Part shown: positions 8,270 to 36,640 of the stretch, piece by piece | How the letters are laid out: every line of letters begins with the position of its first letter | Position numbering within the stretch: the first letter of the stretch is position 1 | Source: Saccostrea echinata | Lineage: Eukaryota | Length of the DNA stretch: 64,000 bases | Direction of reading: 5' to 3' | NCBI RefSeq assembly: GCF_033153115.1 | Contig: NW_026889796.1 | Location: 7,130,001-7,194,000, forward strand | Translations under genes and position numbers: made by a program | Notes under the pieces: model-generated | The model's database searches: none | Seen by the model: the letters and a program-made list of their open reading frames with translations, nothing else | What the model was told of the DNA's origin: nothing

Positions 8270-8790
8270 TATTTAAAAGCATTCTGAATCTATACACAGA
8301 TACTCTGATGTTGATATAAAAAGGATGCTGGAGTTCCTCATAGACAGCATCTATATAATCTTTGGAGACCAGGTCTTCCAACAATCTTTTAATATTTTAC
8401 TGGGCACAAATTGTGCTCCTTTAAAAACTGTCCTGTTTTTATTTATTTCTTTGAGTCAGAATTTATTCAAAACCTTCTACATGAGTAGAGAAAAACTGTT
8501 GTTGTAGCCTTCAACTCAATATTTACTTGTAGATATATCGACGACGTTTTTCAATTAATAAGTTATTCCCATACATATGTCGACGATTTATCTCAATTAA
8601 CCCAAAATAACAGACACCATACTCTGTCACATCTGTTTCATATCTAAATATTTTACTGACTATAGACGATAATAGCCTACATGTACTAGGGACAAAACTG
8701 TATGAAAAATGAGATGACTTCAGCTTTCCAACTTTCCTTATTTATGTAGTAATATTCCACTGTCACCAGCACATGCTGTTTATGTCTTCC
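8270..8790 (+). mobile_element. Degraded Penelope-like RT fragment
   Basis: MLEFLIDSIY..GDQVFQQS..GTNCAPL, RYIDDV, LYEK*DDFSF. Confidence 0.8.
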
Positions 8791-9140: not shown

Positions 9141-10789
9141 CCGGCTTATTCGATAGGGCTCATGGCGGATGCGTCCGGTCTAGATGAGATGCTGTCTCCT
9201 TGTAAGCACCTGATCCAACCTCTGGAATCCCCAGGGGTTTGTGTTTTATGCCCTGTTCATAAACTTTTATTGATCAAAAGATTTTTGGAATCGATCACGG
9301 TTCTTTACCTTCACCTTTTTTACTAGAGCTAATTGAAGATTATTATTTCATTTGAGACTGTCGCTTCAGACAGGACATAATTGTATGTTTTTTAAATGCC
9401 CATTGATGATACCTACTCTTGAAAACTTGTACAGTGTACATCTCCAAAAAAGTAAGACGATTTGCACAGAACTTCTTTATTTTTATATGAAAATAAAAAG
9501 AGATCACAATTGTTTCATGGCATTTCAGTATTGTACGAAGCAATGTATTTGATAATGTCTTATATAGTTATGCTTAGAAATTAATATTTGTTTAATTTTT
9601 ACACTGGTTTCTTTTTTTGAGAAATCAAACAACCACACTCCTGTAGATAATAGAAACTGTTCAAGGTATTTTATGAGTTTTAATTGTTCGAAATACGGAT
9701 GCAGTCTTCATTAAATTTTTAAAAAGATGAAACAGAAGTTAAATGCTTTAAAATGCATTTCAGATCAAATATTAGAGACGATCTTGAATGCTGTGAGAAT
9801 TACAGACGAGTCGACAATAAATGTGAAGGTAAGAGCTTATAAAAGTTGTCAGGCAATATCATAGAAGATGAAATACATGTAACTACATGTATTTATTTCA
9901 TGTATTTCATATTCTATTGTTTTTGGTTCTGTTTATGCATATTTAAGACTACGCGATCAAAGTAAAAAAAATCAGTTTAAAAAAGAAACGACTTTTTTAT
10001 TCTTTTTTTTTTTGAATTTCGATTACACCAATACATTCATATCATGCTTTACTAAGGCATAATGTTGGGCAACATTTCTATGAATATAGTTTTTTTTTTT
10101 ATTAACGAAGGATAGTGAATGACCACAAATGACGTCCATAGATAAACCTATGAAAAACCTATGAATATGTATCATGTGAAATCGGTTTCAAACTCAATTA
10201 ATTATGAAATTATGTAAATAATACTGATTGTTGTTTTAGAAATTCAATTTCACCCTGGGGGCAAAACGGGGGGGGGGGGGGGCAAAATGATGTTTTTCTA
10301 CAAAAAAAAATGGTTCTAGAACTCCTCTTACATTTTAAGAAGTATCCAAATCATCTTTGAAAGATGATTGCAGGTGTCCTATAGGTAGTTGAAAACAACA
10401 CAGAACAACCCGGTGTTCAGTGCCCTATGTCATGTGCAAGAAGCATGTATTTGCTTTTAGAGAGGTTATTGACAGGGATATGTCGAAGATAATTGGTAGT
10501 GACAGGGATATGTCGAAGTTAATTGGCAGTCCAAACCACTTTCTCTTTATGTTTTTCCCCTGGTTATCTCCATTCATCAGATATCTCGAAGTTTTGTCCC
10601 GTCTAGTTTGAGATTACGAGGTTTGATTGTATCTGTTTTAACTACCACGGCAACACTTTTCAACGAAATCAAAAATAGATGAACAGACATATATGTATCT
10701 TAGTGTACATGTAATCTACTTGCAATTGCGCAGTCTTATTGAATCGGATCAAAACGTTAAGAGGAGTAGTTTTTTGAATTTTGAAAACA

Positions 10790-16672: not shown

Positions 16673-17921
16673 NNNNNNNNNNNNNNNNNNNNNNNNNNNN
16701 NNNNNNNNNNNNNNNNNNNNNNNNNNNNNNNNNNNNNNNNNNNNNNNNNNNNNNNNNNNNNNNNNNNNNNNNNNNNNNNNNNNNNNNNNNNNNNNNNNNN
16801 NNNNNNNNNNNNNNNNNNNNNNNNNNNNNNNNNNNNNNNNNNTAGCATTCAACTGTTTTCAAGATATTTGGCCATTTCTTTTTCTTTCTTTCTTTTTTTT
16901 TTTTGGGGGGGGGGGTACCTTCAAGGTTCATGACCTATATCATGACACAAAGAACAAGATTATATATGTTTAAGGGTAAAGCTTAAATGTTTTGTGATAT
17001 TTGACCATTACCAGTGGGAATGACCTTCAGGGGCCATTACCTATATACCATTTTAATAGTCATGATACAAGGTTAATATATATATATCTGGTTCAAGGTA
17101 AAACTTTCATTTGAGACACATGTATTCGGCCTCCCTTGCAGATTGTTCGTTCCTCTCTCAGACATGCAGTAAATGTATGACCTGATGGAAGAGAGTAAAC
17201 TTCTATTGTCAGTTAGTCCCTAAACACATTTAAATGCATTTAAAACATTATACAACTTTTCACTTAACACCGCAAAAAATAAATTGTTTATGAAATAATC
17301 AATCATGTTAGTAACACAAATTAGAGAGCTTGGTAAAACGAGTACTACTGTAATTTGGGAAGGGTGTTTGTCTAGATATTCCAAAGAGGGGGTATATTAG
17401 CCAAATATAATAGGAAAACATACGACTTTTGGATGTGTATATTTAGGCCAAGTCAATCTGCGTCACCAGGATAGGTTTGAAAGCCCCCCACCCCAATATA
17501 TATATCTTCTGATATGTTTTTTTTCTTAAATATCGTTTTGGCATTTAAAATTTTCGATTTCAAAATTGCTTCAAAGTAGAAATATTACCTTGCAACAACA
17601 TGAACAGATTCATCGACTTCCGAATAGAGACTTTTTTAAACAGAAAAAATTGAAAAACTTACACACGAGGCCTAATTGCCACATGCTCACCTAAGCATTT
17701 TTTGCCCAATTTAATACATGTAAGATTTGAGACTTAAAATGTTGAAATCATCAAATTAACCGTTATATATTGGCTCAGAAAAGAAAATGCATCTTTTTTT
17801 CAAGTATTTTTCTGCAATGAAAATTGAAAATGTCATTTTGGCATCTAAAATTTTCAATTTCATCAAAATTGTTCCGAGCATTTTCTGCAAGAAAAAATTG
17901 AAGTTCGATACCTTGTTACAG

Positions 17922-18059
17922 TTTGTTGGCCAGGTACCCACGGTAAAAACTGTAAGGAAGATTGTCCTAACGGAAGATATGGACTTCTCTGTAAAGAAGT
18001 TTGCAGCTGCTCATCCTGCGACAAAGTTGTAGGATGCCAGCCGAACATAACTCATCTGG
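17922..18059 (+). CDS. Unit B EGF-like exon (8 Cys)
   Basis: ttgttacAG|TT TGT TGG CCA GGT...CTG G|GTaact; phase 1-1, open frame, CxPGxxGxxC..CPxGxYGxxC..CxCxxC...GC pattern. Confidence 0.85.
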
Positions 18060-18710
18060 GTAACTTTTTTTTTTTCTAGATTTCTAGAAATTTCAGTTTA
18101 TATTAGGAAAGAAACAAACCAGGGGTCAATATCAAAAGCACATATTTTATGATTAATACACGACATCTAATGGAGTAACAAAAGTATTTCGATATTTTTA
18201 TCAAACGTAGAGCTACATATACTAAGATATATGCTCCTCTATGAAAAACTGTTGCTGAAATATTTCTTAGTTTTTGTGGCGGAAAGATCATTTTCTGCTT
18301 TTCATTATACAATAATGCTGAGCAATATAGACTTTAAACTTTTTTTCACATGGGATTATTTATTCTCCCAAGAACTATTACAGTTATTTATTAAATTGAA
18401 ATCCACTTCCTCTCTCATAATTATGACAATTATTTGTAAGTGAAAATATCATTAAGGCTTAAAAAATTAATAATGCTTTAACAAGAAAATGACCATTAAT
18501 TTCTATTTCTATAATGTTTTATGACAATGCAGCAGCATAATTCTTACCAAATATTTCTCATTAATGATTATTAATGTTTTCATTGAATGATCTCGATTTA
18601 ATTCTCACACATATCTGAATGTATTTCTGTGAAAGGTACAGCCCTCAATTGCAGTTTCACTTTAGTTTGATACTTTATAAGACTAGTACTATGGAACTAG
18701 CCAACATGCA

Positions 18711-19499
18711 TACTGTAAACGTGGTTATTTCACGAGTTGAAAAATTGACAATTTTTTTGTTTACGGAAATTGACGAGTGTTAATTTTGACGAAATATTGA
18801 AGCAAGAGTTATGTATATCTTTGATTTCACAAGATTAAACAAAAATAAATACAAAGAACTCTTAAAAATCGAGTTTCAAAACTAGTACTCAGAGTAAGTT
18901 CGCCAGACGCTAGAGGACCAAAAACTTGATGGAAACATTGGCTTAGTTGACTTGATAACGTCTACGATTAAGCCGCTCTTTGCGATATTGGTCCTGAAAG
19001 TTCATGATGTTATAAGCAAGGACCGCGACTTCCTCGGGAACTCGTTTACAAGCGTTCTCATCAATAAAATTTAATTTTGCTTGTAAAAGCCATTTCACAG
19101 TGTACAAGATTTGATTGAATTAATTGTTCTTTTGTATTTTGTTTTATTAAACGACACCGATTGCCTGAAGTGACAAAGTAGGTCAAACACGGCGTGATAA
19201 TTACGCAAAGTCAGAATGTTGTGACCATGGGTAATAATAGTATATGACATACTCAATGGTTTTTAAAACTGTGATTATATGTTTTCATAACTTTTTTCAA
19301 AAATATTAAACAGTAACTTTGATTTAGTTTTTATGGGGGAAGTCGAGAAAATTAAGCGGTAAAGTTGTACAACGGTCAATGTCTATTGTGACGCTATATA
19401 TATGCTATGAAGTTTGACGAGGGGAAATTTTGACGAGAAGAGAAAAATCGTCAATATAGTCAAAATTAGCACGTCGTCAAAATTTCCACGTTTTCAGTA
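18711..19499. mobile_element. TA-flanked MITE in a unit B intron
   Basis: TIRs TACTGTAAACGTGG ... CCACGTTTTCAGTA with ttgacg/cgtcaa subterminal repeats. Confidence 0.75.
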
Positions 19500-20446
19500 C
19501 TAGTTTCAATCAAATTGATTTAACTTTTCCCTATACTATCTACGGATAAAAATTTCTTCATTTTTAGAATAACCTAAACTTCGGCTAAGAAGAAAATATT
19601 TGTATGAAAAGATTTTTCTCCGTTAAAGTAAATGCAAACTTACGGATCATATCACTGAAAAGAAAAGAAAAATGGAACATGCATTCGGTGACTTTTCTAT
19701 TCTTACAATTTAATTCAGAACCAACAGGAGAAGACAATGATGTACCATGGCATATTGTTTCATCCCTTGCTGGAGGGTTTAGTCTGATATTTGTTTTTTC
19801 TCGTACACTGCTCATTAAGGTAAAACTTTTGTTATGTTTTTCTGCATGAAGTAAAATTACTCTCAGTTCACTGGGGTTAAATTATCTATATTTTTTTTTA
19901 TTATGAAGTCCATTTCCTTTTCAACTACATGTATCACCCAGAGGCAGATTAAATATTGATTTCAGATTTTTTTCTGTTAAATTATAAAGGAATTAGAATC
20001 AATTAAAATTAAAGTTGTTTCTTGATAGGCTACAAAAACGTATAATTCTTTGAATAAAAATTCTTTTTTTTTTTTTGCTAATTTAAAAGCGTAGCAACTT
20101 CCGGAATAGGATATATCTTATCGTCTTTCCTATCAGATATGTATAAAGTACTAAGTTGTTTTAAACATTGTATATTGTGCTGCTTCGGTTCATATCTATG
20201 AGGGATATTGTTCTTACAGAAAACGGCTTTCGAAATCAGATTCAAAGGAAGAAAAAGGTAAATCATTTTTCTTTTCTTTTTTGCATTACGAGATTAGCCA
20301 AAAAGACACAAAAATAATATCCACGAAAATAGATTGAGGATTAACAGTGTAATTGAAGACGTTTTTAAATCGACTGAAACAAACGATTTGTAAATTTTCA
20401 CTCCATATTTAAGAAAATTTGTATATATGCTTTATTTAAACAACAG

Positions 20447-20667
20447 AACAGTGTAATTTGCATAATTCACCAGAATCTAAGAAGGGCTGGAAGAGAAACG
20501 AAGACGTTCCTCCATATATTCCATCAAATAACATCATCAATTGTCCAAACAGTTTAAGGGGCAATGACAGCAACGAACCAAGCAATGCAGAACATGTTTA
20601 TGGCCACCTTGACATGGATTTAGGACCTTATGATACATTGAATAAAATGCGGAAAGTTCAGAAATAA
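20447..20667 (+). CDS. Unit B terminal exon: cytoplasmic tail with ITAM
   Basis: caacAG|AA CAG TGT; in frame with ORF 20458..20667; contains YGHL-x6-YDTL; PYDTLN is shared with the unit D tail. Confidence 0.75.
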
Positions 20668-20798
20668 TACTGTTACTATTAAAAAAAAATCTACATTTCC
20701 ACACTTACACAGTTGTAAAGATTAATTAATCAACTATCTTATATATTAAGAACATCATTTAAAAAAAATCAGCAAAAAATTTTTAATCATGTTTATTA

Positions 20799-20833
<35 letters not shown>

Positions 20834-22977
20834 AAATAGAAATGCAAATCATTTCAGAAAAAAATGTATTCAATTTTTAACAAAGTAGAAGTGGATGGTT
20901 TACTTCTTATGATATTTAAAAAAATGAAGGTGGGGACACTAAAAAATAAAACATTAAGAAGCGTTTTCGAAATTTCAAAACAACCACTGAATATATCTGA
21001 TATGCTTTGATAGATTTGTAAAATATAGATTATATTAAAATATATTAAAACATGGACAAAATTAATTCATGTACAGCCTTGCTCCTTCGAGAAAAATGTT
21101 AGGGATAAAAATATATGTAATTCAATCATAATACTTCACAATGTCAAAGGCATTCCAAAATGTTTTCATTCTGTAAAAAATAAAAAAAAAATATTACATG
21201 TATGTTTTACAGTGTAATTTTTCACTTTATGATTGGTTGTATGTCTATAAAATGTTTGCTATATGTTCTGTAATAGTCATATTGTATGAACGTGCATGAA
21301 TTCAACACACTTGAAGACTATTAAAAAGGAAACGGCATTTTGCAATGTTAAAAGCATTTTTAATCTATATTTCTTTCTGTAATTATTTTTAACTATTACT
21401 CTTTAAAATATAGAGAATGACCATTTACTTTTGTGCGGATTGTCCACTGCTGGTACAATAATTATGCACAGGAAGTAAATCAATTCATTTTTGAGAGAGA
21501 AACAGACTTTTAAATTGAAAATACTTAACAAAGGAAGAGTATGTGTTTCACCTAAAAATAAATACTAAAAAAATTAAGTTCTTCCTGTTAATATTTTGGG
21601 CTAACAAGTACACAATGTGTTTCATGAAAATGGAAGTGACGTAAAATGTACAGAACATCAAACATCAGGGAGTACTAAAAAAAAGGAATACGAAAGCCAA
21701 TAAAGCTCATTAGAGATTCGAAATATGAAAATCGAAATACAAGAATCGAATTTTTATATGCAATATCTTAATAAACCAATCAGGGGGCGAATTCAATTTA
21801 ACAATAAAATGCCTTTTTGGTTATTAGTATAGGAATTAATGTTGCAGCTGTTGCAGAAAAAAAAAACATAACCCGCGAAAGCGTTATGTTTCATGTTGAC
21901 GTGATGTGCAGTATACTAAGATGCAAAAAATTCTAAAATTAGGGTTGATTTTGATGTGAAATTATTTTCTTTTTGGATCAAACATAAACACTTTGAATAT
22001 GAAATAGATTAGGTGGATTGAAAATAAGCTTGCATAGAATTTCAATCCAATGTTTTCTCAGACGTCCATGTCGAATTGCACCGCCCATTTTACTCTCTAT
22101 CATCAAATATTTTGACGGCAATTACGTTAGCTACATATTTACAATCCTGCAAGTAAATGTTCTGCGGTCTTAAAATAATTGCTTTAAAAGCGTAAATACG
22201 CTTATTTTTAAGATACTGTGTAAAAATAGAGTACATGTACATGCATTGCGCATTGGCAACCCTAGCCCCCTTTTAAATACACAAATGCACACGAACAAAT
22301 GGATTAATCGTTTCTGTTTCTTGAACCCTGTATGAAGTGTATTCAAATTTAAATTAATTATTACCTTGTAGTTCTGGACGTAATTTTGATGGCAAAAGTC
22401 TATGAAACAGCCTATAGATCAATATTTGTTAAATTTGTAAATTCGTGACTAAATTATTAATGAACTTCTATGAGGAGGGTACCTGACTTGTAAAGTCATA
22501 ACCTCTTTAACAGTAAATATATGAAAATTAATGACCCTCCTTTAAAGGACTACAGTATACTAAACCTAACTGTATTTAAGAGATTAGAATGTCAAATTGA
22601 CATGTACATGAACTTACAAACAAAACATCCTCTTTTAGTATAATATCTTCCTTAATAAAAGAAAATGTTTAAAATAAACTTAATGACACCAATTAGTATA
22701 AATCTATACATTTTTCAAGTGATACTTTAATCAATATCGACGAGTCCATTGTAAAATAAAGCCTATCCTGAGTCAGATAAAATACACACAAAAATTCAAA
22801 TGTATTAAACATCTTTAGCTCAACACTTCCTGATTGTATCTTTGTATATTCCTGTGAAAGATTTTAACAAAAGTAATCTCCCATATCACATTGCATATAA
22901 ACTCAAGGGCTAAAAAAGACTGCATAAATGTGGTATTTAAGGACAGTAAAACCTTTCACGCAACTAATATTTTTTTA

Positions 22978-23561
22978 ATGGAGTGGTATTCATCCATCCT
23001 TTTCTTATTCTTGAAGTTATTTCTCGTGTTGCCATACATTTCATCAAATAACGAAACAGGAGTTTGCTCTAGGAATCATCTTGGGTTTGTACATATATTT
23101 TAATTTTTCCATTATGCATTATGCAGGTGTAACGGAAAGTCCTAAAAACAAATAGATTATATTATAATGAATTGTCTATAATTCCGGAAAAAGTTGGGGC
23201 GACAAATCATTATTGTACCAACTGTTATTTTGTTCTCGAGCTCATATATGGCTTGGACAATCTTAACGTAACTTAGTAGAAATGATAATCGCTTAATTTA
23301 TTTGTGTATTCAACATTTCAAATTTCAAAATGGTAACCATAACCACTGATGGAATCAGACTTTATAGAAACAATCTAAATTTCATTTTTTTCAGTAACTG
23401 TCCAGCCAATCTTTTTACAATTTGAAAGAATTATTCCCTGCATCAAATCAAATCGTTTTTATAATGTTTGCAAAAGGAAACATTCTATTTTTTTCCTTTC
23501 TATCCTAGAGAAACACTTGATTGCTGTCCAAATTACCGAAAAGTTGGACCAAAATGTGAAG
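22978..23561 (+). CDS. Unit C: partial paralog; intact signal exon plus CCxNY micro-exon, EGF exon deleted, no TM exon seen
   Basis: Exon 22978-23084 MEWYSSILFLFLKLFLVLPYISSNNETGVCSRNHLG|gtttgt; exon 23509-23561 ETLDCCPNYRKVGPKCE|gtatga. Lies in a block duplicated with unit D. Confidence 0.75.
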
Positions 23562-24910
23562 GTATGATACATGGAATCCATTATCAATAAGTATAGTATC
23601 TAACAGTGATATACTTTACTTTGTAAGGAAATAAACATCTTAATAGAGAGGCCATTATTTCATTCATGGTCATAGAAGATAAGTTCTGATTGAGGCAATA
23701 TAACAATTTTCTTGTCCTGTACATCAATTAATTTTTTTTATAACACTATACATTCTTTAGTATGAATTTCTTTTCGAATCAAATTTAACGATTTGAAATT
23801 AGAATTTAGCTACATCTGCATAATTATTAAAAATACCAAATGCTGACTGTAAAATAAGGTGTTGAAGGATAAAGTTTATATTATTTTAACTATCAAGCAT
23901 CCATGATTAAAAATAATAATTGATATTTATCTACAAAATATAAATTAAAAAAAAAAATTAGCATTTTCTGTCATTCTTGTTATACCTATGTACATGTATC
24001 ATTTGCTTTGATTAATATAATATTTACCTACAAATCAGTTATGCTGTCGTAAAGTGCATTAAAAAAAGTGCATGAAAGCCAACCATCAAAATCTTATTAT
24101 TTATGGCCAGTATTCATCCCATAAAAGTTTTAACTTTTTCGTAAATGAGGTTTTTTTTCTTCATTGAAATAAAAAGGTTTGCTTGTTGATTTTGATTTTC
24201 ATATTGATGTTTACTGTAAATAATTTAAAAGTAATTATTTTAAATTATTATAAGTCATTAATCCAAGATCCAAAATGTAAGATCACGTAATGGGTTGTTT
24301 GTGCTATTTGTCAGGATATTTATAAATTTTGTACCATTTATTTAATACACAATTTACATCAATGTTTCTTGAAGAACTTGATGATCTTAATCATTTCCAT
24401 TAAATGAATATTGATACAAATATACTAGTATTTATATTTACTCAGGATTTTCCCCCAAAAATGTAAACAACGTTTACAACTTTGAAAATTCAAACTTATG
24501 TCAATTAAAAAAGAAGAAAAAAACCTGCGTAACATATCAAAATGACATTGGAGACAGAGGAAATATGAATCCATTTTTATAACGTTTTATGCTGGATCGA
24601 ATTTGATGCAAATGGCGTCATCACACAAGTTCCCGGCCCACAGGAGTTTCTTATTGAATGTGTTATTCCCATAAAACCTGAAATTCAAGATTTTTAAATG
24701 GTTTTTACTATGACAGAAAAAGAAAGTTGCGTAAGCAATGAGAAACTTGTTTAGCCCGTCTACGACGTTTTGGGACACCCCTCGTATTATCAATATTTTG
24801 AAAAATTAAAATCTTAGAGATACAGTAACTCACTTCCATTCTCAATGACCATGTAGTGTAGGGCAGCGCCGCGAGAATTCCATCGGCATCGAAAGCAAGT
24901 TTTTTGACTT

Positions 24911-25005
24911 GCCTAGATAGCCGAGCGGTCTAGCGCGATGTTCCTATATTGCTACAGTGTAGGAGACAGATTCCGTAGATCGAGAGTTCAACCCCGGGCT
25001 GGGGC
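24911..25005 (+). other. tRNA-like (pol III A/B-box) remnant inside a copy-C-specific insertion
   Basis: TAGCCGAGCGGTCTAGCGCG (A box/D arm) ... GAGTTCAACCCC (B box/T arm). Spacer too long and stems imperfect for a functional tRNA. Confidence 0.4.
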
Positions 25006-27111
25006 GGAAGTGGGTATCCTTATATAAAGTGAATTTCTTTGTGCTTTCTATATTAATATTTCTTCACTTAGGGCAGTTATGTTAGTTTNNNNNNNNNNNN
25101 NNNNNNNNNNNNNNNNNNNNNNNNNNNNNNNNNNNNNNNNNNNNNNNNNNNNNNNNNNNNNNNNNNNNNNNNNNNNNNNNNNNNNNNNNNNNNNNNNNNN
25201 NNNNNNNNNNNNNNNNNNNNNNNNNNNNNNNNNNNNNNNNNNNNNNNNNNNNNNNNNNNNNNNNNNNNNNNNNNATCAAAGTTGACACCATATTCTACCG
25301 AAAATGTATATTTTAAAGTTTTAAGTGATATTGTTTTATACTTTTTTATACTTCAATAATTGTATTACAGTGTGGGAATGGTCCATAAACCACATTTAGA
25401 TTTAGATATTATAGAAGCATATTGACGGCTGTAAATAAAATGAAAATACAATCTAATATACAATTTCAATAATTTCTTTAACTAAAACGAAAAGAAAAAA
25501 ATAATGATATTAACATGTTTACGTGGTTGTGATTTTGAAATTTATTCTATTTTTTAAATGTAAAAATTCTGAGTTAACAAGAACTTTTGAATCATTTTCA
25601 AAGATATTTGAGAAACGTTTTTTCCCCTCTAATTCATTTTGGAAAATTAAATAATTTTACCCACGTTTATTATTCTGAAGTTTTTGTGTTTGCTATTGAA
25701 TTGATGCATCTATATATATTTTATCTATTAGTAAATATGATTTTAAAGGTAAACACATGTCACTGAATAGTACAACGGTATGTACTACGTGAACGCTTCC
25801 ATTATATTTTAAAGGGGCCTAGACACAGATTTGAAGTTAATATTTTCTCAAATTTTCTGTATAATATGATGACTCATATGTTGCTTTAGCATTTCACACG
25901 AAAATATAATAAGAAACTTATTTTATCTGGAAATTATTGAAACTACGAATTTCGGGACGCGTTTGATTGACACATCGTTGCACTTTCATAATTTTTATCC
26001 TTAATATTTAAGAAAAGTAGCAATTTTTTTGTGTATTAATGAAAAATATGTGTCCTTAATGCTGGCATATACATTTTGTTGTTGGCAACGATATATGCTA
26101 CGAAAATGTGCATATTTTGTTGCCAAAGTATGTTTTGAAGAATATTTTACAGTGTTCGGAGAGAGAAAAAGAGAGGAAATAAGAACTATATGCGGTAAAA
26201 GCATATTTTTGCCCCAATAAAATCAAATTTTGAAAATCTTTAGAAATGTACACAATTGAGTATATTGTATGAAAATTCTTAATTGACGAACATTATAATA
26301 GTTTGGACGTAGATTATCGTCAATGCTAGATTCATTGACGGCGAGTTTCTTTGTCCTCGCTGCATACCTCTTACTTTCCTCGCTGTTATTTTACCGTGTT
26401 CACAGATTTTACGGATTTTCTACTGATGCCATTTTAAACAAATAAGGTTTGGTCTCCAACCTCATATCGATAAAATCAGTGATTTGGTTATTTATAACAC
26501 AGAAAATCTAATTTATATCGCTTATATTTTAGTAAGATTAATGTAAACAACTGATCAGCCATTGTCGCCTAGGACGTATGACGGTCACGTGATCCCTATC
26601 TAATTAACTCTATTTTTTTCTTTTTGATTCAGGTACCTTATTTGAATCAAATTATGTTTAATTAACGCGTAATATCCGTACTAAAACACAAAATTAATGA
26701 TCTTATAAGAACGTATAATAGAAATGCAATTTATGTTGCATTTCTTTATTAAACTTATTGCGTAAGGAAATAATAAAAACTTACTATCTGGTGGAGACAT
26801 CTGGACAAGGAATGTTACTTAAAAGAAATTGTATAGTTGATATGATTTTAATTTTGAAATAAAGCAAACAGGCAGAATTTTACTGAATTTATACCAACTA
26901 ATATAATAAAAAATATAATTTTAGATAATATGGGTTTTGTGTTTTCCTTAAACAAATTTGATTATCTTTGATGTCAATTGATGGAACAAACTTGGAAGTT
27001 TTTATGAACTTTCATACTACTTGATGAACTATAAATTGAAATAAAAGTATTTTAAAATCAATTTATATAACTGCCCCCCTTCCAGCTCCCAAAGCAAACT
27101 GAGTATAATTC

Positions 27112-27380
27112 TTTGTTTGTCTGTTTGTTTAAAGTCCTTTTAAGATTTTTTTTCTCAAATTGAGACGCTACCAATTGCCTATGGAGGGCTGCAAATTTAG
27201 ACCTGTACTCGGCACTTACGGTCTGTGAGCAGTGAAGGGTTTTTTTTTATGCCAGACCTACTGCAAAACGGGTCCTCGCTTTATACAATCTCATTCGAAG
27301 GACAGGTCTCCACGTGCCGCCGCGGGAATCGAACCTGCGACATAAGGATCAACACAGCAAATGCTCTAACCACTGCGTCA
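27112..27380 (-). mobile_element. tRNA-derived SINE
   Basis: (TTTG)n tail, SINE core, gggaatcgaacc B-box complement. Confidence 0.75.
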
Positions 27381-30300
27381 TGCATTCAAACAATATAATT
27401 ACATTTTAGCTTGATTTTGATTTTAGTATGTAGGTAAAACATTAACACAGACAATTTGCACAAAGGGATCTCTCAACTGCATATTAACACATTTTTTGTG
27501 ATATCATGCACTTGACCTAGTTGTACCTTCAACTCTATTTCTTTCAAGTGTCGCCCATAAATTGCTTCGGCGCAAGCGCTTAACATGATTTTTATTTCCA
27601 TTGTAATTTGTTGCATAAATAACCTAATTATATTTTAATGTACCTAAACAGTGCTTTGGAGAGTTTTATAAGTGTACGAATTATTTGATGAGAATTTTAA
27701 CTTATCCACAAAGTTGAGGGCTTTCCACTTTTTATTCGTAGTTTCACTCTTTATTTCTTCACTCGTAAATTATCTCAAATCGGATAATTTAATTTCAATC
27801 CATCGAAAATAAAGAATGTAACGGTTCAATATTCAATTAAAAAAATACCCTCAGACTGAAAGCTATATTCAAGTCGTGAATTTTACAATAAAGTGATATG
27901 TGATTTGAAATAAGACATGAACTGTATGACATTCATCCCGTTAGGCAGCTAAAGTTTTTAGTTTCAACTATTCCACTATGACGTCATGTTTTTTTGTAAT
28001 TCAAAAAACTGATTACATGGAATTACATGGAATGTATACTGAAAATTTCTTAAAACGTAGTAATCTTATCCTTATCCTGTAAATGGCTTTTTTGCTGTGC
28101 AGAAATTAAATGCAGAAATCAATTTGCTTATTTTCAGGGGTCAAATCGCAAAAAAAAAAAAAAAAAAATCAATTCACAATAAACAACCATTGTATGATGA
28201 CTTCTTTATGAAAAAATTATCAAGAACAAAATGTATTGTAATAACCCCCTTATCTCCTTCTCATTTAGTGATTCTTAAACTTTCACTTATCGCAAAATTT
28301 ATACAATATCATATGGCATAGCATGAATATCTGGTAGGAATGTCTTCGGGTATATCATTTTCTGAACTTGCATTGTATAGGTAATAGTAATATTAGAGAA
28401 AAGATAAACCTTTTTGCACTCCAAAACTATAGGTTTGTGATGTCGGAAAATTTAATTATCTTTTCTTTTTAATGAGGTTTTTATTCTCCATATTTTGTCA
28501 CATAAACCATTTAAATACGGAAAACATCAATTGTCGATATAGAAGCTGCTCCGTTTTATTGTTACTTTGTATGTTTTTACAGATCAATGATGAAAGGTCA
28601 ATTTTTAAGGTACATAACAACTCCCACCAATAAACAACATATTTTATTTCTTACAGATTTATTTAAACCAGAAAAAAAAATCATCTAATTAATGACCTCA
28701 TTGTTTTTCATGTACTACAATGTTCGAATAAGGATAAGGTAAATGTACTTCCATCATCGAATGATTATCAGAAGTTTTACGGATATATCATCGTCAGAGT
28801 CTGAATTGACATACCAGANNNNNNNNNNNNNNNNNNNNNNNNNNNNNNNNNNNNNNNNNNNNNNNNNNNNNNNNNNNNNNNNNNNNNNNNNNNNNNNNNN
28901 NNNNNNNNNNNNNNNNNNNNNNNNNNNNNNNNNNNNNNNNNNNNNNNNNNNNNNNNNNNNNNNNNNNNNNNNNNNNNNAAATAAAATTCTGGTGCGTTCA
29001 ACAAATATTCTGATACAGCTTAAGAATTTCAATTAATATTTTATTAAGCATATACAGAGTCAAATTTTAAATTATTCATGGCCCTTACATCGTTGTGACA
29101 TACACACTTATACTTATTATTTAACTTACTTCCCCCACTTTATTTGATCTATGTTAAAAGAATCAATATAATAAATTTTATTTTCTTTGTTTATGTTTGT
29201 TCATGTTTGGATAGACAGCTGGATCCTCCTCTGCACCTGTTTTCGACTTTTGTTGACAATATCGCCTAGTCACCTGTTTTCGAGCGCCCGTACGCTAAAT
29301 TATAAAATTTGGTCATATAAGACATTAATTTGATGCACCCTTAATTAAAAAAAAATAAAAAGATTAGATATATTTGTTCCTGGTGCCCTCAAAACAAAAG
29401 ATTTTGTCATATCACGATAGCTTTCGAACGAATTGACTAGCGCTACTTTCACTTCCGTGATCAATGTCTGGAGAATGTTTTCAATCAAATAATGCGGATT
29501 TTAGAATTTAAGAAGTTGGTTTGATGTCGACCGTGTTCGAAATATCAAATCGGTTTTGGAAATTTGATATTTTGGATATTTTCAGTTAACTTATAAAAAC
29601 TCAAAATATAAAAAGTGTTTTGGTTATTTAAGATTTGAATCAAAATGCTATATATCTAAAAATCTTAAACGTTTGAAAGTTGAAATTTAGAAGTTTGAAG
29701 TAAATTTTAAATAATCAAAAGACGAAAAATGGTCCTGAATTTTAGATTGTTAAGAGTAAATTTTCTGAAGAAACGGTACATCAAAATCTCAACGGTTTGA
29801 AATACACAAAAATCGTTTTTGGAAATTTGAATTTTGAATATTTAAGGTAATTTTTTAAAAAAATTAACATTTAAAAACCTGTTTCGAAATTTGAAAATTT
29901 AGATTTTTGAGCTAAAATATTAAATTTCAATATCCGAAATCAGTTTGATTTTTTTAAAATGTAGAAATTGGAACTAATATAGTAGAATTCTAAAGCTCTA
30001 AATCATTTTAGAAATTTGAATTGTTAAGTGTTACACGGACTCGTTTCCTTATCTTAGGGTTCTACACCCAAATTTCAGTACCTGACGGTGTTTGTAACAA
30101 GTAAAAAACTGCGTTTTTTTGTCGTAGCTTTATCCAGTAAGTTTTCCTTTGGAGTCGACGGTTGAACTTTTAAAATAATGTAATTTTGAATCAAATGTTT
30201 TGAAGAGAAGTATTTTGTTGTTTAATAGAGAACTATTGATTATCTTGCTGAAATTGCAATTAAAGCTACAATTAAAAAATAACGATTATTAGTATGTAGC

Positions 30301-32587
30301 AGTGCATTACATAAAATAGATGCCAATATCGTACATTATTTACTTAAACACAATATCGCTTAAATGTCATACTGTCGGATATAATATATTATTATAATAG
30401 TTATATTCTGCAATGAGAATTATTGCAATATTCCCCAGTCCTTGAAATCACTTAAGATAATCATATTTTAAAATGCGTTCATAAGAAAGATTGCTGGCCT
30501 GGATAATTTCGTGTCAACTGTTGTAGTTTCATTTGACATGATTGATTGTATGGGAAATTCTGCCGTGAGTAATGTACTGTTCGCCATGGAATAACATACA
30601 TTTATTGACTGGGTTCAAGGGCAACATGCGTTTTGTCGGACCCAAGAACCATATTTTTGCTTGAAGCCTTTAGGCCTCGGGCAAACAGTTTGGTTCGAGG
30701 GGCCGACAAAACACAATTTGCCCGAGAACGCAGTCAATAAATGTTTTTAATACCTTTTATTGGGGGGGGGGGGGCAAACATGTATCTTGAGTTGGATTTT
30801 ACTGCGGTAAAATTCGGTCAATTTCTGTCACTAATGCGTATACGATTTAGCTGATCCCGCAATCAGTGTAACGTAACGCAAGCGGTCCAATATCTCATCG
30901 ACAGATCGAATATCTCACTCTGCGGTCATACATCTTTTTTTTATAACCGCTCAGTAAAACATTGGAATTGTTAGACCTTTTTAAGTATAGATTTACATAA
31001 GAACTAATTCTTCAAAGGCCGGGGTTGATCTACATTTCCTGCCACCTGGTAGACAATTAAGCATTAAGCACATAAGGGAAAAAAGGCGAAATTATTAACA
31101 TCTCTGTCGGTAATGCTGGTAAGAGCAGGCACTGCATGCAGAGGAACCGAGTCAGCTTTGTTTACACACGAGAAAACTCCAATCTCTTTACATCAATGTG
31201 TTTATCAGTACAATTTGCAATAAAAGTAATCTCTTTATACTTGAGAATTTGTAGGATATCCTCAAAGAAAGAGAAATATATTTAAACAAAGAGAAATATA
31301 TATAATTAAAAAAAATTCATCAGTATAACTGTATTTTTGTTAGGGAGGAACCGGAAGCGATATATAGTAAGCTTTCGCCTCTTCAATAATAACCTTTAAT
31401 GACTTTTTTTGACTAGTCAAAAGAATTCTTACTTTATAGTACCCCCATCCCCCCCCCCCCAAATAAAAAAGGTTTGGTTTTCCCCCTTCCAACTCCAACT
31501 GAAATTGCTTCTTATACGTGTCTGAACAAGGAACCTATATACTAACGGGATAGGCAACTCTCGCAAGTCTCGCGATATGTCGTAAGTTGCGGGATTTTGT
31601 AAGTAAATTTAATTATATATATATATATCTTAAATGTTATTAAATATTTCAGATCAAAAGCTTAATTTATCTATCAAAAAATATTCAAGATTTGTTGTTG
31701 GCACTGTTTATACTCCTTATCTTAGAAGTACATGTAATTACGTTTATTTCAAAATCAGCACGTGTACCTGATCCTCTGGATTTCTGAGAATTCGCCGATT
31801 CTGATGCGTTTGATTTATATTTAAATTATATTATAATGTATGCTTTGAAATCTATTAAAAATAAGGTTTGTATATTACAAAAACAATTCAGAAACAGAAA
31901 AAATGACCATTCTCATGTAAGATAAATTCAGATTTACTAAAGTAGTAAGTTGTTCAATTTTAATTTTACAGTGTTTAAAATAGACTATATACATCAGCCA
32001 AGAGATTGTCTGAAGAAATTAAACTTTTGTTGATAATTAAAGTAAACAAGAAGAGAGGTCAAATCATAAAAAACGACGAAAAGAAAGATCAAAGGAAAAA
32101 ACAAGAAAAAATAAAATTCCAAATAAAATTTAACTGTAAAGATATTCTTCACAAATTTGTTTCATCAAATCTATCAACATACTTCATTAAAGAGATTAGA
32201 ATGCCAAATTGACATGTACATGAACTTATAACAAAACATCCTCTTTTAGTACAATACCTTCCTTAATAGAAGAAAATGTTCAAAATAAACTTAATGACAC
32301 CAATTAATATAACCCATACATTTCAAGTGATACTTTAATCAAAATCGACGAGTCTCTTGTAAAATGAGACCTTTCCTGAGATACATAAAATACACACAAA
32401 AAATCCAAATGTATTAAATGTCTTTAGCTCAACACTTCCTGATTGTATCTTTTTTATTCCCCGGTGATAGAGTTTTACAAAAATAATCTCCCATATCACA
32501 TTGCATATAAGCTCAAGGACTAAAAAAGCACTGCATAAATATGGTATTTAAGGATAGTAAAACATTTCACGCAACTTACATTTTTTA

Positions 32588-35500
32588 ATGGAGGGGTATA
32601 CATCCATCGTTTTCTTGTTCTTTAAGTTATTGTTCGTCGTGACATACATTTTATCAGATAACGAAACAGGAGTTTGCTCTAGAAATCATCTTGGGTTTGT
32701 ACATATATTTTAATTTTTCCATTTTGCTTTATGCAGGTGTAACGGAACGTCCCAAAACAAATAGATTATATTATAATGAATTATATATAATTCCGGAAAA
32801 AGTTGGGGCGACAAATCATTATTGTTCCAACTGTTATTTTGTTCTTGAGCTCATATATAGCTTGGACAATCTTTATGTAACTTAGCAGAAATGATAATCG
32901 CTTAATTTATTTCTGTATTCAACATTTGAAATTTCAAAATGGTGACCATAACCACCGATGGAATCAGACTTAATATAAACAATCTAAATTTCATTTTTCT
33001 CAGTAACTGTCCAGCTAATCTTTTTACAATTTGAAAGAATTATTCCTTGCATCAGATAAAATCATTTTTATAATGCTTGCAAAAGGAAACATTCTAGTTT
33101 TTTCCCTTTATATTCTAGAGAAACACTGGACTGCTGTCCAAATTACCGAAAAGTTGGATCAAAATGTGAAGGTATGATACATGGAATCCATTATCATTGA
33201 GTAAAAACATAGTATCTAACAATGATATACTTTACTTTGTAAAGAAATAAACATCTTAAGAGAAGGGCCGTTATTTCTTTCATGGCCATAGAAGATAAGT
33301 TTTGATTAAGGCCAATTTACAATTTTCTTGTCCTGTACATCAATTTTTTTTCTGAGAATGCTTAGTACATTCTATAGTACGAATTTCAATTCGAATCAAA
33401 TTTAACTGTTAGATATAAGATTTTAGCTACATCTACATTTAAAAATGTCTAATTTTGACAGTAAAAAAAGGAGTTCAAAGATAACGTTCATATTACTTTA
33501 ACTATCTAGCATCCATAATTTAAAAAAGAAAATTCATATTTAATTACAAAATACAAATTAAATTTCATTTAGCATTTTCTGTCATTTCTATTATACATGT
33601 ATGTATTATTTACTTTGATAAAAATAGCATTTAGCTACAAATCAGTTTTGCTGACGTAAAGTCAAATAGAAAAAAATGTACATGAATGTCAAACATAAAC
33701 ATCTTATTATTTATGGCCAGTATTCATCCCATAAAAGTTTAATTTTTTTCATAAATGAGTTTTTTTTTCTTCAGTGAAATAAAAAGGTTTCCTTGTTGAT
33801 TTTGATTTTCATATTTTAATGTTTACTGGAAATAATTCAAAATGAAATATGGAGCAGTATTCAAGCCCAAACTCCAATAAAACAATACAAATCGAGAGTC
33901 CAAACATGGTCCTCCGAAAACAACAGAGTTGAGATCAGGTGCCATTAAGGGTTGAGCACTCCCTGTCGACCGGCCATACCCGCCGTGTGCTCCTTGTCAT
34001 GATGGAAATAACAGAAAAATATGTCGACAATTCAGTGTGTAAATAATGGCCTAACAATTTGTATGAAAAACTTCAGTCAGCATATGACTTGCTGACAATG
34101 TCATTGTATCGACCACAGAACTTACCAAATGATGAATTAAACGAGACTGTTGATATTCTTGTTTCATCAACTTGTTAAAAGTAATTTTTTTTAAAATTAT
34201 TTTAAGTTATTAATCCAAAATCCAAAATGTAGTAATGTTTAAGCTATTTGTCAGGGTAAATATAAATACTGTACTATTTTATTAATACACAATTTACATC
34301 AATGTTTCTTGAAGAACTTGATGATCTTAATTATTTCCATCAAATGAATATTGATACAAAATTAATATACTAGTATGTATATTTACGAGGATTGTCCTAA
34401 AAAGTTGTAGACAACATTTATAATTTTGAAAATTCAAATTTATATCAATTAGAAAAGAAAAAAAAACCTGCGTAACATATCTAATTTTCACGTAAATGAC
34501 ATTGGAGACAGAGGAGATGTGATGCCATTTTCATAACGTATATTTGATGCAAATGACGTCGTCAAACATGTTCCCAGCGCACATATGTATTCCTAATGCA
34601 AATTGCAGGGAATATATATATTCAAATATCATTGAAGATCTGATAGTTAAATCAAAGTTGACATCACATTGTATTTTTAGGTTTTAAGTGATATTGTTTT
34701 TGATATTCTCATACTTCAATAATTGTATTATAGTACGAAAATGGTCCAGAATGATCACGACGAAAACACGATAGATTAAAGTTACACAATGAGTCAAAAT
34801 CATGTGTTTCTTTTAAGATAAGTGTATCACAAAACAAAAGATTTATGTGAAATATGAATATAGCAAAGTTTTGAAAACTCAACTGCACTGTAAAGCAAGA
34901 AAAGAACTGCAAAATTTAAGTGCCGGAAAAAGAAATGCTGTATCTATAGCGTAGTTTTTATCGTCAATTTCAAGGTCACGCGTCCTTTATTTTTAGCGTG
35001 AAACTTGTAAACAACATTGAATTGGAGCAAACAAACGTGAGGAATAAGTTCTGATCATCTTTTTTGAAGACTGTATCATAATTCTCGGTCATCCGACATT
35101 TATATCTATGGAATTGACACCATGGTAAATTCTTCAACTTTTCAGCGCATGCGTACAATAAAGAGGAAACAGTGCAACAATATTTTTGTGTTGGGTTATA
35201 AAATGATATTTTTTGCTTTTATTTTTCTCCATAAAAGTAGATTTTTTAGGTTCTGAAACCTGTAATTTTCTGAAACCTAATATCTTCAGGAACTGAACAA
35301 AATTTGCGTGTGTCATGCAAAAATTCTACTTTTGTCAATTTTCCCGTTTTTCCGTCACAGTGTCACTTTAAGATAAAATGCAGTTGCAAACATATTAACG
35401 GCTGTAAATAATATGAAATTAAAATCTAAGATACAATATGAATACATGTATATGAAAGCTTGCTTTAGAATGCAGACTAATGGTAAATTGTGCAAACGAA

Positions 35501-36565: not shown

Positions 36566-36640
<75 letters not shown>

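What the first reader, a model, noticed from the sequence alone, without database searches (positions are those of the whole stretch)
20590..20645. Canonical ITAM in the unit B tail
Seen: E-H-V-YGHL-DMDLGP-YDTL fits the ITAM consensus [DE]xxYxx[LI]x6-8Yxx[LI] exactly and lies near the C-terminus of a short tail. Known: ITAMs recruit tandem-SH2 kinases (Syk/ZAP70), and Drosophila Draper signals via an ITAM-like motif to Shark. Inference: B is or was an activating phagocytic/immune receptor in a mollusc.
Basis: partly seen in the sequence, partly recalled or inferred. Interest (0 to 1): 0.75.

Follow-up and report, generated by a model that had tools for sequence, protein, structure and literature searches.

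The report
Conserved ITAM-like tail, oyster mini-EGF receptors
The two-tyrosine signalling motif is really there, is spliced in frame onto a membrane anchor in RNA and is strictly kept in a small oyster-specific receptor family, so it probably is a docking site for signalling enzymes, although this particular gene copy looks damaged and no function has been tested.

Summary
Observation confirmed. E-H-V-YGHL-DMDLGP-YDTL lies at 20590-20640, eight codons before the stop of a terminal exon.

- **Spliced and in frame in RNA.** Spliced contigs from four public runs join the EGF-like exon, the membrane-anchor exon, a small basic exon and this tail exon. In RNA the motif is in frame with the anchor.
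- **This copy looks damaged.** The assembled window has one extra T in the anchor exon (T6; RNA shows T5). Its first exon has a stop four codons after the ATG. An intact, transcribed paralogue 150 kb downstream carries the identical motif.
- **Family hallmark.** Nine genes on this contig share Y-x-x-L-[ND]-M-[ND]-x3-Y-[ND]-T-L. Both tyrosines, both leucines and the 6-residue spacer are invariant, despite synonymous codon changes and otherwise diverged tails.
- **Narrow range.** Outside this genome I found only three "uncharacterized" Saccostrea cucullata proteins.
- **A possible reader exists.** A Syk-like gene (Syk-type N-SH2, second SH2, Syk-type kinase exons) is in the genome.

Best reading: an ITAM-type phosphotyrosine docking site in a lineage-specific family of single-EGF receptors. 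Binding, phosphorylation and any immune role are untested. Membership of the Draper/MEGF10 family is not met at Pfam level.

ITAM-Syk signalling in oysters (CgIgR) and ITAMs in EGF engulfment receptors are already known. This scan also noted similar clusters on other DNA of this genome.

The parts
9570..9666 (+). Putative exon 1 of unit B (start codon and signal peptide). As assembled it is defective: ATG at 9570 is followed by TAA at codon 5, and the signal-like stretch (..ICLIFTLVSFF..) is in another frame.
   Evidence: Homology to exon 1 of the paralogue B', which reads an intact M...signal peptide. Frame translations. The donor at 9666/9667 has the phase that exon 2 needs. It was not covered by the laid reads, so the exon borders are inferred.
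9764..9828 (+). Exon 2 of unit B, encoding ..SNIRDDLECCENYRRVDNKCE, the N-terminal Cys-rich lead-in to the EGF-like unit.
   Evidence: The last 30 letters that RNA contigs X1 and X3 carry before 17920 match 9797-9826 exactly. That is 1 match in the window and 0 in 100 shuffles. AG/GT borders are present. It aligns with CCPNYRRVGRKCE of P0002.
17922..18059 (+). EGF-like exon of unit B (CWPGTHGKNCKEDCPNGRYGLLCKEVCSCSSCDKVVGC..).
   Evidence: Translation. The spliced joint 18059->19719 (GT..AG) is seen in 4 of 4 runs. It is 56% identical to the EGF-like unit of P0002.
19719..19819 (+). Stalk and membrane-anchor exon (..DVPWHIVSSLAGGFSLIFVF..). It is 101 nt in the window but 100 nt in RNA and in B'.
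   Evidence: In RNA it reads on as ..FLVYCSL, and then RKRLSK from the next exon.
19794..19799 (+). T6 run that shifts the frame in the assembled copy. RNA contigs of all 4 runs have T5, and also T instead of C at 19806.
   Evidence: tables 5 and 5c. The contigs fit up to 19798, then carry 18 letters that equal 19800-19817 with one change, and then continue at 20218.
20220..20257 (+). Small basic exon (KRLSKSDSKEEK), the stop-transfer part of the cytoplasmic tail.
   Evidence: Frame 1 translation. Joints on both sides are seen in RNA contigs.
20474..20667 (+). Terminal coding exon (tail) with stop TAA at 20665-20667. An alternative acceptor at 20447 adds 27 nt in frame.
   Evidence: Joint 20257->20474 is seen in X1 and X3. 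Joint 20257->20447 is seen in X2 and X3. Translation.
20590..20640 (+). The ITAM-type motif E-H-V-YGHL-DMDLGP-YDTL.
   Evidence: Conservation.
20588..20673 (+). 86-nt block identical between B and the paralogue B'. It covers the motif, the last 8 codons, the stop and 6 nt of 3' UTR.
   Evidence: The 114 nt of the same exon just upstream carry 20 differences (13 non-synonymous and 5 synonymous codon changes).
20668..20767 (+). 3' untranslated region covered by RNA contigs.
   Evidence: table 8: X5 record 23 covers 20618-20767.

Best explanation
The motif is the signalling core of the cytoplasmic tail of a small type I membrane protein. The protein consists of a signal peptide, a short Cys-rich lead-in, one EGF-like unit, a short stalk, one membrane anchor and a tail of about 77 residues (86 with the alternative acceptor).

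The dual-tyrosine block YxxL-x6-YxxL is the hallmark of a rock-oyster-specific family of nine genes on this contig, and it is held by purifying selection.

Most likely mechanism (inferred):
1. Ligand-driven clustering lets a Src-family kinase phosphorylate both tyrosines.
2. The doubly phosphorylated block then docks a tandem-SH2 protein. The best candidate is the Syk-like kinase encoded elsewhere on the same contig.
3. This starts an activating response such as engulfment.

Shown here: the motif itself, its place in a spliced and transcribed tail that is in frame with the anchor, its strict conservation, and the presence of a Syk-like gene.

Inferred: phosphorylation, the partner and the output.

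The window's own copy (unit B) is probably defective as assembled, or is a polymorphic null allele. The intact paralogue B' 150 kb downstream carries the same motif.

The confidence given is for the mechanism. The anatomy alone I hold at about 0.9.
For: - **Splicing in RNA.** Spliced contigs at 99% or more identity to B, from 4 of 4 runs (2 studies), join 18059->19719. They read T5 in the anchor exon, then join to 20220-20257, and then to 20474 (X1, X3) or 20447 (X2, X3). This puts the motif in frame behind ..FLVYCSL-RKRLSK.
- **Intact paralogue.** B' has a 100-nt anchor exon and an intact exon 1. It is transcribed in X3.
- **Family members.** A profile search of the genome gave 12 matches at E <= 10: nine intact members and one broken one on C47, plus two chance-level rows on C16.
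- **Exact pattern.** 9 forward, 0 reverse, 0/0 control.
- **Invariant residues.** Y0, L3, M5, Y10, T12 and L13 are invariant in 9 of 9. There are 2, 2, 2 and 3 synonymous codons at Y0, L3, T12 and L13. The 12 positions upstream each carry 2 to 5 different residues.
- **Most conserved island.** The block is the most conserved part of 13 aligned tails, including 3 S. cucullata proteins.
- **Syk-like gene at C47:2.11-2.123 Mb.** The upstream SH2 exon best matches the SYK N-SH2 (E 1.9e-7). The kinase exon matches SYK at E 1.7e-15, ahead of every other family except one EGFR entry. All pieces are colinear on one strand.
- **Precedents, from passages read.** Oyster CgIgR carries an ITAM that recruits CgSyk (PMC6994640). 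Draper and MEGF10 ITAMs are read by Shark and Syk (PMC8092387).
Against: - No phosphorylation, binding or expression in immune cells was tested, and the runs' tissues are unknown to me.
- The spacer is 6 residues, the shortest in the consensus. From memory, most Syk-binding ITAMs have 7-8, and the 6-spacer FcεRIβ motif is a poor Syk binder. I could not find a paper to cite for this.
- Residues that an ITAM does not need (H at +2, [ND]-M-[ND], T at +2, N after the last L) are also conserved. This hints at a more specific partner.
- The second tyrosine has S or L at -2 in 6 of 9 genes, an ITIM-like context.
- Unit B as assembled has an extra T in the anchor exon, and an exon 1 whose ATG frame stops at codon 5.
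- The 86-nt identity between B and B' includes synonymous sites and UTR. For that pair it therefore speaks for gene conversion rather than selection.
Confidence: 0.48

Rival explanations
1. The two YxxL units are tyrosine-based sorting signals (YxxØ) read unphosphorylated by clathrin adaptor complexes. They would drive endocytosis or lysosomal delivery of a scavenger-type receptor, with no SH2 signalling.
For: Each half fits YxxØ. The ectodomain loosely resembles SREC/MEGF scavenger receptors in the Atlas leads, with scores of 0.76-0.78 that count as leads only. Unit D in the window keeps only the second half, EPYDTL. That fits independent single units.
Against: Sorting signals need no fixed distance between two copies, yet the spacer is exactly 6 in 9 of 9 genes and in 3 of 3 S. 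cucullata proteins. The acidic residue at -3 (8 of 9) and the conserved [ND]-M-[ND] are not features of YxxØ signals.
Confidence: 0.17
2. The block docks a tandem-SH2 phosphatase (SHP-2/Corkscrew type) or another SH2 protein, and is inhibitory or modulatory rather than activating.
For: The second tyrosine sits in an ITIM-like context ([SL]-x-Y-N-T-L) in 6 of 9 genes. SH2-bearing genes are numerous in the genome: 59 matches to PF00017. Draper-II uses an ITIM and Corkscrew (passage in PMC8092387).
Against: The first tyrosine has N, H, K or D at -2 in all 9 genes, never an ITIM residue. In B and B' the second has G at -2. From memory, tandem-SH2 phosphatases usually bridge tyrosines further apart than 10 residues.
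Confidence: 0.13
3. For unit B itself, the motif is a relic in a transcribed pseudogene. The copy in the window makes no receptor, and its perfect motif is kept only by gene conversion from the intact paralogue B'.
For: Exon 1 as assembled has ATG-CTT-AGA-AAT-TAA, and the signal-like part is in another frame. B' is intact there. The anchor exon has T6 in the assembly. There is an 86-nt identical tract across the motif, stop and UTR, with 17.5% divergence just upstream and 13 non-synonymous against 5 synonymous codon changes.
Against: RNA from 4 of 4 runs shows T5, so the anchor-tail frame is intact in those animals. The transcript is spliced at all sites seen and carries 313 nt upstream of the EGF exon. 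The exon 1 defect was not checked against reads. This rival concerns only copy B; it does not touch the family-wide conservation.
Confidence: 0.35
4. The match is a chance hit of a loose pattern in AT-rich sequence.
For: 34 core-pattern matches in the six-frame translation of the window.
Against: Only 1 match to the full pattern, and 0.037% of tail shuffles. It lies in a spliced coding exon. It is invariant across 9 paralogues with synonymous variation. The genome-wide pattern count is 9/0 against 0/0 for the control.
Confidence: 0.02

Closest known systems
Draper (Drosophila) / MEGF10 / Jedi-1 (PEAR1-type EGF engulfment receptors)
   Same: All are single-pass type I receptors with a PEAR1-like EGF cysteine pattern outside and an ITAM-type dual tyrosine motif inside. 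In Draper and MEGF10 that motif is written by Src-family kinases and read by Shark or Syk (passages in PMC8092387). The Atlas look-alike search lists MEGF10/11, SREC and Draper clusters among the weaker leads.
   Different: This family has one EGF-like unit instead of an EMI domain plus many EGF repeats. No Pfam family is above cut-off: P0002 has none, B's EGF exon has none, and unit D's exon reaches 19.1 bits against a cut-off of 37.5 for EGF_PEAR1L. There is no NPxY in B's tail. The spacer is fixed at 6 residues. The family was found only in rock oysters.
CgIgR of Crassostrea gigas (ITAM receptor that recruits CgSyk; PMC6994640, passages read)
   Same: It is an oyster single-pass receptor whose own tail carries [DE]xxYxxL...YxxL. 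It shows that an ITAM-Syk axis operates in oysters.
   Different: CgIgR has five Ig domains, an 8-residue spacer (YTEL-GQCDPETP-YEKL) and no sequence relation to this family. For the present family nothing has been tested. Its Figure S2 is in a supplement that I could not open.
Vertebrate ITAM chains (CD3, Ig-alpha/beta, FcR-gamma, DAP12, FcεRIβ)
   Same: They have short tails whose main feature is one D/E-xx-YxxL/I-x6-8-YxxL/I block near the C-terminus. From memory, the start of the spacer (L-[ND]-[LIM]-D) resembles Ig-alpha/beta.
   Different: Those are adaptor chains that pair with ligand-binding partners through charged membrane-anchor residues. Here the anchor has no charged residue and the protein has its own ectodomain. 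From memory, the usual spacer there is 7-8.
hemITAM receptors (Dectin-1, CLEC-2 type)
   Same: Unit D of the same tandem array keeps only one half..CEFEPYDTL... This is formally like a single-YxxL motif with acidic residues in front.
   Different: Those are type II C-type lectins. No relation and no test here.

Membership tests
ITAM (motif class) | Sequence Yxx[LI]-x6-8-Yxx[LI], usually with D/E at -3 of the first tyrosine | tested here: met
   YGHL-DMDLGP-YDTL with E at -3. E at -3 in 8 of 9 paralogues, and the spacer is 6 in 9 of 9.
ITAM (motif class) | Located in the cytoplasmic tail of a membrane protein | tested here: met
   RNA contigs splice the tail behind a 23-residue hydrophobic segment followed by RKRLSK (with frames). 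The topology itself is inferred from the signal peptide of B' and P0002 and from the positive-inside rule.
ITAM (motif class) | Both tyrosines and their spacing conserved in homologues | tested here: met
   9 of 9 paralogues and 3 of 3 S. cucullata proteins. Unit D of the window lacks the first half.
ITAM (motif class) | Tyrosines phosphorylated by Src-family kinases on receptor clustering | not testable with these tools
   Needs phosphoproteomics or a kinase assay.
ITAM (motif class) | The doubly phosphorylated motif binds the tandem SH2 domains of a Syk-family kinase | not testable with these tools
   Only the presence of a Syk-like gene was shown.
Draper/MEGF10/PEAR1 family | EGF_PEAR1L / EGF_laminin domains above the Pfam cut-off, in multiple copies | tested here: not met
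   P0002 and P0001 have 0 families at E <= 1. B's EGF exon has 0 families. Unit D's exon scores 19.1 bits against a cut-off of 37.5. There is a single unit per protein.
Draper/MEGF10/PEAR1 family | N-terminal EMI domain | tested here: not met
   No Pfam hit in full-length P0002. Only about 25 residues lie between the signal peptide and the EGF-like unit.
Draper/MEGF10/PEAR1 family | NPxY motif in the tail for PTB adaptors (GULP/CED-6) | tested here: not met
   No NPxY in B's 64-residue tail exon, nor in the small exon.
Syk/ZAP-70/Shark kinases (presence of a reader in this genome) | Two SH2 domains followed by a Syk-type tyrosine kinase domain in one gene | tested here: inconclusive
   At C47:2.11-2.123 Mb three pieces lie on one strand. 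The first SH2-like exon best matches the SYK N-SH2 (E 1.9e-7). The second best matches Grb10/7 only (E 6e-4). The kinase exon best matches SYK and ZAP-70 besides one EGFR entry. That they form one transcript was not shown. A first candidate on C9 proved CSK-like.

The most novel reading that the evidence does not exclude
A roughly 1-Mb stretch of one rock-oyster chromosome holds a lineage-specific family of miniature single-EGF receptors whose tails work as self-contained ITAMs with a fixed 6-residue spacer.

These genes sit in tandem arrays beside siblings with the same kind of head but other tails:
- half-motif only (unit D);
- YDEI/YVEI Src-SH2-type tails (units E and F);
- short 'ITAM-only' forms (B and B'), kept identical over the motif by gene conversion.

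That would make the region an invertebrate counterpart of vertebrate paired activating/inhibitory receptor clusters, built on an EGF head instead of an Ig or lectin head.
Probability: 0.2. Interest if true: 0.7.

Novelty: new variant of a known kind. Interest (0 to 1): 0.45.

Why it matters
If the block is a working ITAM, rock oysters have built a fast-evolving, tandemly duplicated family of minimal EGF-headed receptors around the same Src/Syk docking logic that vertebrate antigen and Fc receptors use, and that Draper/MEGF10 use for engulfment.

That would give a compact, easily synthesised test case: a 17-residue peptide, one Syk-like gene and an ectodomain of about 45 residues. With it one could ask how old ITAM-Syk signalling is and how invertebrates diversify innate receptors.

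It also shows a practical point. The assembled copy would be called a pseudogene, yet RNA shows an intact anchor-tail frame.

Tried and rejected
- **First Syk candidate was wrong.** I first took two full SH2 matches 4.7 kb apart on C9:42.77 Mb, with kinase pieces downstream, for a Syk-type gene. The SH2 next to the kinase best matches CSK (E 5.8e-30), so I dropped it.
- **No solved relative.** PDB sequence search with full-length P0002 gave 0 hits at E <= 10.
- **No Pfam family above cut-off.** Pfam on P0002 and P0001 gave 0 families. Pfam on five EGF-like exons and the tail gave only sub-threshold rows.
- **Profile search of 1.84 billion representatives.** It gave 3 proteins at E <= 0.001. 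I judged one of them (P0003, a tandem-repeat protein) unrelated from its sequence.
- **Word-based search with P0002.** 3 proteins among 1130 candidates, all S. cucullata "uncharacterized". B-type short tails were not found in either library, so no orthologue of B outside this genome is known to me.
- **Signal-peptide exon of B.** Searching with the signal exons of units C-F gave only one weak row (E 0.14). The exon was placed by alignment to B' instead.
- **Literature.** 'ITAM + Crassostrea + EGF-like + phagocytosis' found 0 papers. A broader search and two searches for a citable statement on ITAM spacer length (passages of PMC7582382 read) gave nothing useful. The spacer remark therefore rests on memory. 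I claim only that I found no paper on this family in those searches. Subscription journals in fish and shellfish immunology are largely outside the library.
- **Not done.** I made no structure prediction, because the tail is expected to be disordered and no complex modelling is on offer. I made no check of reads on exon 1.

Full report
**The observation.** The + strand between 20440 and 20664 is open and ends ...SNAEHVYGHLDMDLGPYDTLNKMRKVQK, followed by TAA.

A bare pattern match is weak evidence in this AT-rich DNA:
- The core pattern Yxx[LI]-x6-8-Yxx[LI] occurs 34 times in the stop-free six-frame translation of the window.
- The pattern with [DE]xx in front occurs once, here.
- In 200,000 shuffles of the 64-residue tail, 0.25% gave the core pattern and 0.037% the full one.

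**The gene around it.** The window holds a tandem array of small genes of one kind. EGF-like exons (CWPGxxGxxCxxxCPxGxYGxxCxxxCxCxxCxxxxGC) lie at:
- 577-711 (unit A);
- 17924-18058 (B);
- 30486-30575 (degenerate, with stops);
- 35731-35853 (D);
- 49017-49154 (E);
- 58192-58335 (F).

Matching signal-peptide, 'CCxNYRxxGxxCE', anchor and tail exons accompany most of them.

For unit B the exons are:

| Exon | Coordinates | Content |
|---|---|---|
| 1 (putative) | about 9570-9666 | start and signal peptide |
| 2 | 9764-9828 | Cys-rich lead-in |
| 3 | 17922-18059 | EGF-like unit |
| 4 | 19719-19819 | stalk and anchor |
| 5 | 20220-20257 | small basic exon |
| 6 | 20474-20667 | tail |

That step was left out, and frames across joints were worked out from exon lengths and the single-exon translations.

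**RNA evidence.** One search for public runs returned five small-share holders, each holding about a tenth of the sampled words. That is the share expected if only the exons are present. I laid four of them (three samples at most, two studies) on 16900-20900. All four are contig sets, so they show presence and joints, not levels.

- Contigs at 99% or more identity to B (for example a 735-nt record in X1, with 0-1 differing letters per exon piece) skip 18059->19719 with GT..AG ends in 4 of 4 runs.
- They then run through the anchor exon and join to 20220-20257.
- From there they join to 20474 (X1, X3) or to an alternative acceptor at 20447 (X2, X3). That acceptor adds 27 nt in frame.
- In the anchor exon all four runs carry five T where the window has six (19794-19799), and T for C at 19806. 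The aligner reports this as 18 'letters between' that equal 19800-19817 with one change.

With T5 the exon is 100 nt, as in the paralogue. The reading then goes ..WHIVSSLAGGFSLIFVFLVYCSL, then RKRLSKSDSKEEK, then E-SKKGW...EHVYGHLDMDLGPYDTLNKMRKVQK. That is a 23-residue hydrophobic anchor, a basic stop-transfer stretch, and the motif in frame in the cytoplasmic tail.

With T6, as assembled, the frame breaks, and no acceptor seen in RNA brings the motif back into frame. It would hold only for the assembled haplotype, if the T6 is real.

**The 5' end.** The X1 record carries 313 nt before 17920. Its last 30 letters match 9797-9826 exactly: 1 match in the window and none in 100 shuffles. They lie in an exon with AG/GT borders that encodes ..DDLECCENYRRVDNKCE.

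Upstream of it, alignment with the paralogue places exon 1 at about 9570-9666. In the paralogue this exon reads an intact MLRNTYICTWIFTLIIFV... signal peptide. In the window the ATG is followed by a stop at codon 5, and the signal-like stretch lies in another frame with no ATG.

This defect is not in a long homopolymer, and I could not test it against reads. So copy B as assembled has two frame problems. One is contradicted by RNA and one is untested.

**The paralogue B'.** A copy 150 kb downstream (G000:C47:7,296,4xx-7,300,665) has all exons open: exon 1, a 100-nt anchor exon, the small exon and the tail. Its EGF-to-anchor and anchor-to-small-exon joints appear in run X3 (loose end at 19727 and the 23 'letters between').

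Its tail ends with the identical ..EHVYGHLDMDLGPYDTLNKMRKVQK. The two copies are identical over 86 nt (20588-20673: motif, last codons, stop and 6 nt of UTR). The 114 nt just upstream in the same exon differ at 20 places, with 13 non-synonymous and 5 synonymous codon changes. Identity at synonymous and untranslated sites points to gene conversion over the motif rather than to selection alone.

**The family.**
- A profile of five tails found nine intact members and one broken one on contig C47 between 7.15 and 8.13 Mb. It also found two chance-level rows on C16 (E 1.72).
- An exact degenerate pattern for L-[ND]-M-[ND]-x3-Y-[ND]-T-L finds 9 places in the 923-Mb genome. All are on the + strand of C47 in these tail exons, with none on the other strand and none for the backwards control.
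- Across the nine, Y0, L3, M5, Y10, T12 and L13 are invariant, and the spacer is always 6. E stands at -3 in 8 of 9.
- Y0, L3, T12 and L13 use 2, 2, 2 and 3 different codons. The amino acids, not the nucleotides, are therefore being kept. The 12 positions upstream each carry 2 to 5 different residues.
- Seven members have long tails (about 180-270 residues in the last exon) with further conserved islands and a common end, ..LLRYSFAPSTEI.
- B and B' stop 8 residues after the motif. Unit D of the window keeps only the second half, EPYDTL.

**Outside this genome.** The tail profile found three proteins at E <= 0.001 among 1.84 billion representatives. Two are real relatives and one is an unrelated repeat protein. 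A word-based search with the best one found three proteins in all. All are 'uncharacterized protein' of Saccostrea cucullata.

The full-length ones (418 and 392 residues) show the architecture: signal peptide..CCPNYRRVGRKCE-ECWPG.. EGF-like unit, stalk, anchor, and a tail with ..SENIYSHLNMDA[LM][PS]YNTLN... The family is thus narrow as far as these searches see, and nothing is known about it.

**What the head is.** No Pfam family reaches its cut-off:
- P0002 and P0001 give nothing at E <= 1.
- B's own EGF exon gives nothing.
- Unit D's exon gives EGF_PEAR1L at 19.1 bits against a cut-off of 37.5.
- PDB sequence search gives nothing.
- The Atlas look-alike search lists unnamed molluscan clusters first (0.91-0.86). 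MEGF10/11, SREC and Draper clusters appear only at 0.76-0.78 and at TM 0.35-0.47, which the tool itself calls leads.

The head therefore resembles one unit of a PEAR1/MEGF10-type EGF repeat, but membership of that family is not met.

**Is a reader present?**
- SH2 matches number 59.
- My first candidate for a tandem-SH2 kinase, on C9, is CSK-like and was dropped.
- At C47:2.11-2.123 Mb, on one strand, lie three pieces. The first is an SH2-like exon whose best solved relatives are the N-terminal SH2 of SYK (E 1.9e-7), then ZAP-70.
- The second is an SH2-like exon with only weak Grb10/7 matches.
- The third is a set of kinase exons whose best relatives are SYK (E 1.7e-15) and ZAP-70. One EGFR entry scores marginally higher, and other families score four orders of magnitude lower.

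That is good but incomplete evidence for a Syk-family gene.

In Crassostrea gigas, a Syk was shown to be recruited by the ITAM-bearing Ig receptor CgIgR (PMC6994640; passages read, supplement not seen). Draper and MEGF10 ITAMs are read by Shark and Syk after Src-family phosphorylation (PMC8092387; passages read).

**Reading.** The conserved, expressed, cytoplasmic YxxL-x6-YxxL block is most simply a phosphotyrosine docking site of the ITAM type.

I hold the anatomy (real motif, in-frame tail, family hallmark) at about 0.9. I hold the specific mechanism (Src-type writer, Syk-type reader, activating output) at roughly 0.45-0.5.

Against the mechanism stand five points:
- the short spacer;
- the extra conserved residues inside the block;
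- the ITIM-like context of the second tyrosine in 6 of 9 genes;
- the lack of any expression or binding data;
- the damaged state of copy B.

The rivals are sorting signals, phosphatase docking, and (for B alone) a transcribed pseudogene kept alike by gene conversion.

**Novelty.** ITAM-Syk signalling in an oyster, and ITAMs on EGF-type engulfment receptors, are both in print. This is a new, lineage-restricted variant: a single EGF-like unit, no EMI domain, no NPxY, and a fixed 6-residue spacer.

Two earlier notes of this scan (s1-803105 and s1-803080) describe similar mini-EGF or lectin-EGF receptor clusters with ITAM-like tails on other pieces of the same genome. One of them calls the genome a black-lip rock oyster, which I did not test. 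The theme has therefore been found before in this scan. The exact motif of the present family is confined to C47.

Noticed in passing
window 577-711, 22978-35853, 32588-42904, 48291-51650, 56831-63501: The window is a tandem array of at least six mini-EGF genes with the same exon plan but different tails. Unit D's long tail keeps only the second half of the motif (EPYDTL) and the family end ..LLRYSFASSTKIV. Units E and F have unrelated tails with YDEI/YVEI-type tyrosines. A degenerate EGF exon with stops lies at 30486-30575.
   Followed up: partly
window 20588-20673 versus G000:C47:7300589-7300674: An 86-nt tract is perfectly identical between B and B', amid 17.5% divergence in the same exon. 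This is probably a short gene-conversion tract centred on the motif.
   Followed up: partly
window 18728-19500: An intronic stretch is covered by much deeper RNA contigs that differ from the window by about 6% and carry many small indels. It is probably an expressed repeat or mobile element with copies elsewhere.
   Followed up: no
window 6204-6809 (-) and 8277-8504 (+): Open frames resemble each other (..FLIDNIYI..GDQVFQQS..GTNCA..) in the 8-kb intron between B's exon 2 and A's EGF exon region. They are likely remains of a retroelement.
   Followed up: no
G000:C47:7070414-7071725 (L024): A third B-like copy has an EGF-like exon (80% identical) and the first half of the anchor exon (75%). It diverges after mid-anchor and has no motif-bearing tail.
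   Followed up: partly
G000:C47:7205800-7205949 (L014): A fragment of a long-type tail exon with a TAA inside lies 12 kb beyond the window's end. It is a broken family member.
   Followed up: no
G000:C47:2108000-2126000 (L018, L021): A Syk-like gene: an exon of SYK N-SH2 type, a second SH2-like exon, and kinase exons most like SYK/ZAP-70.
   Followed up: partly
G000:C9:42767844-42777978 (L017): A CSK-like SH2-kinase gene has a further full SH2 match 4.7 kb upstream on the same strand. Whether that SH2 belongs to the same gene is open.
   Followed up: partly
window 20800-20830 and 36554-36646: There is an A31 run about 130 nt after the stop of B, a possible internal-priming site for poly-A-selected libraries. 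A 12-nt microsatellite reading YLSI in one frame abuts an N run.
   Followed up: no
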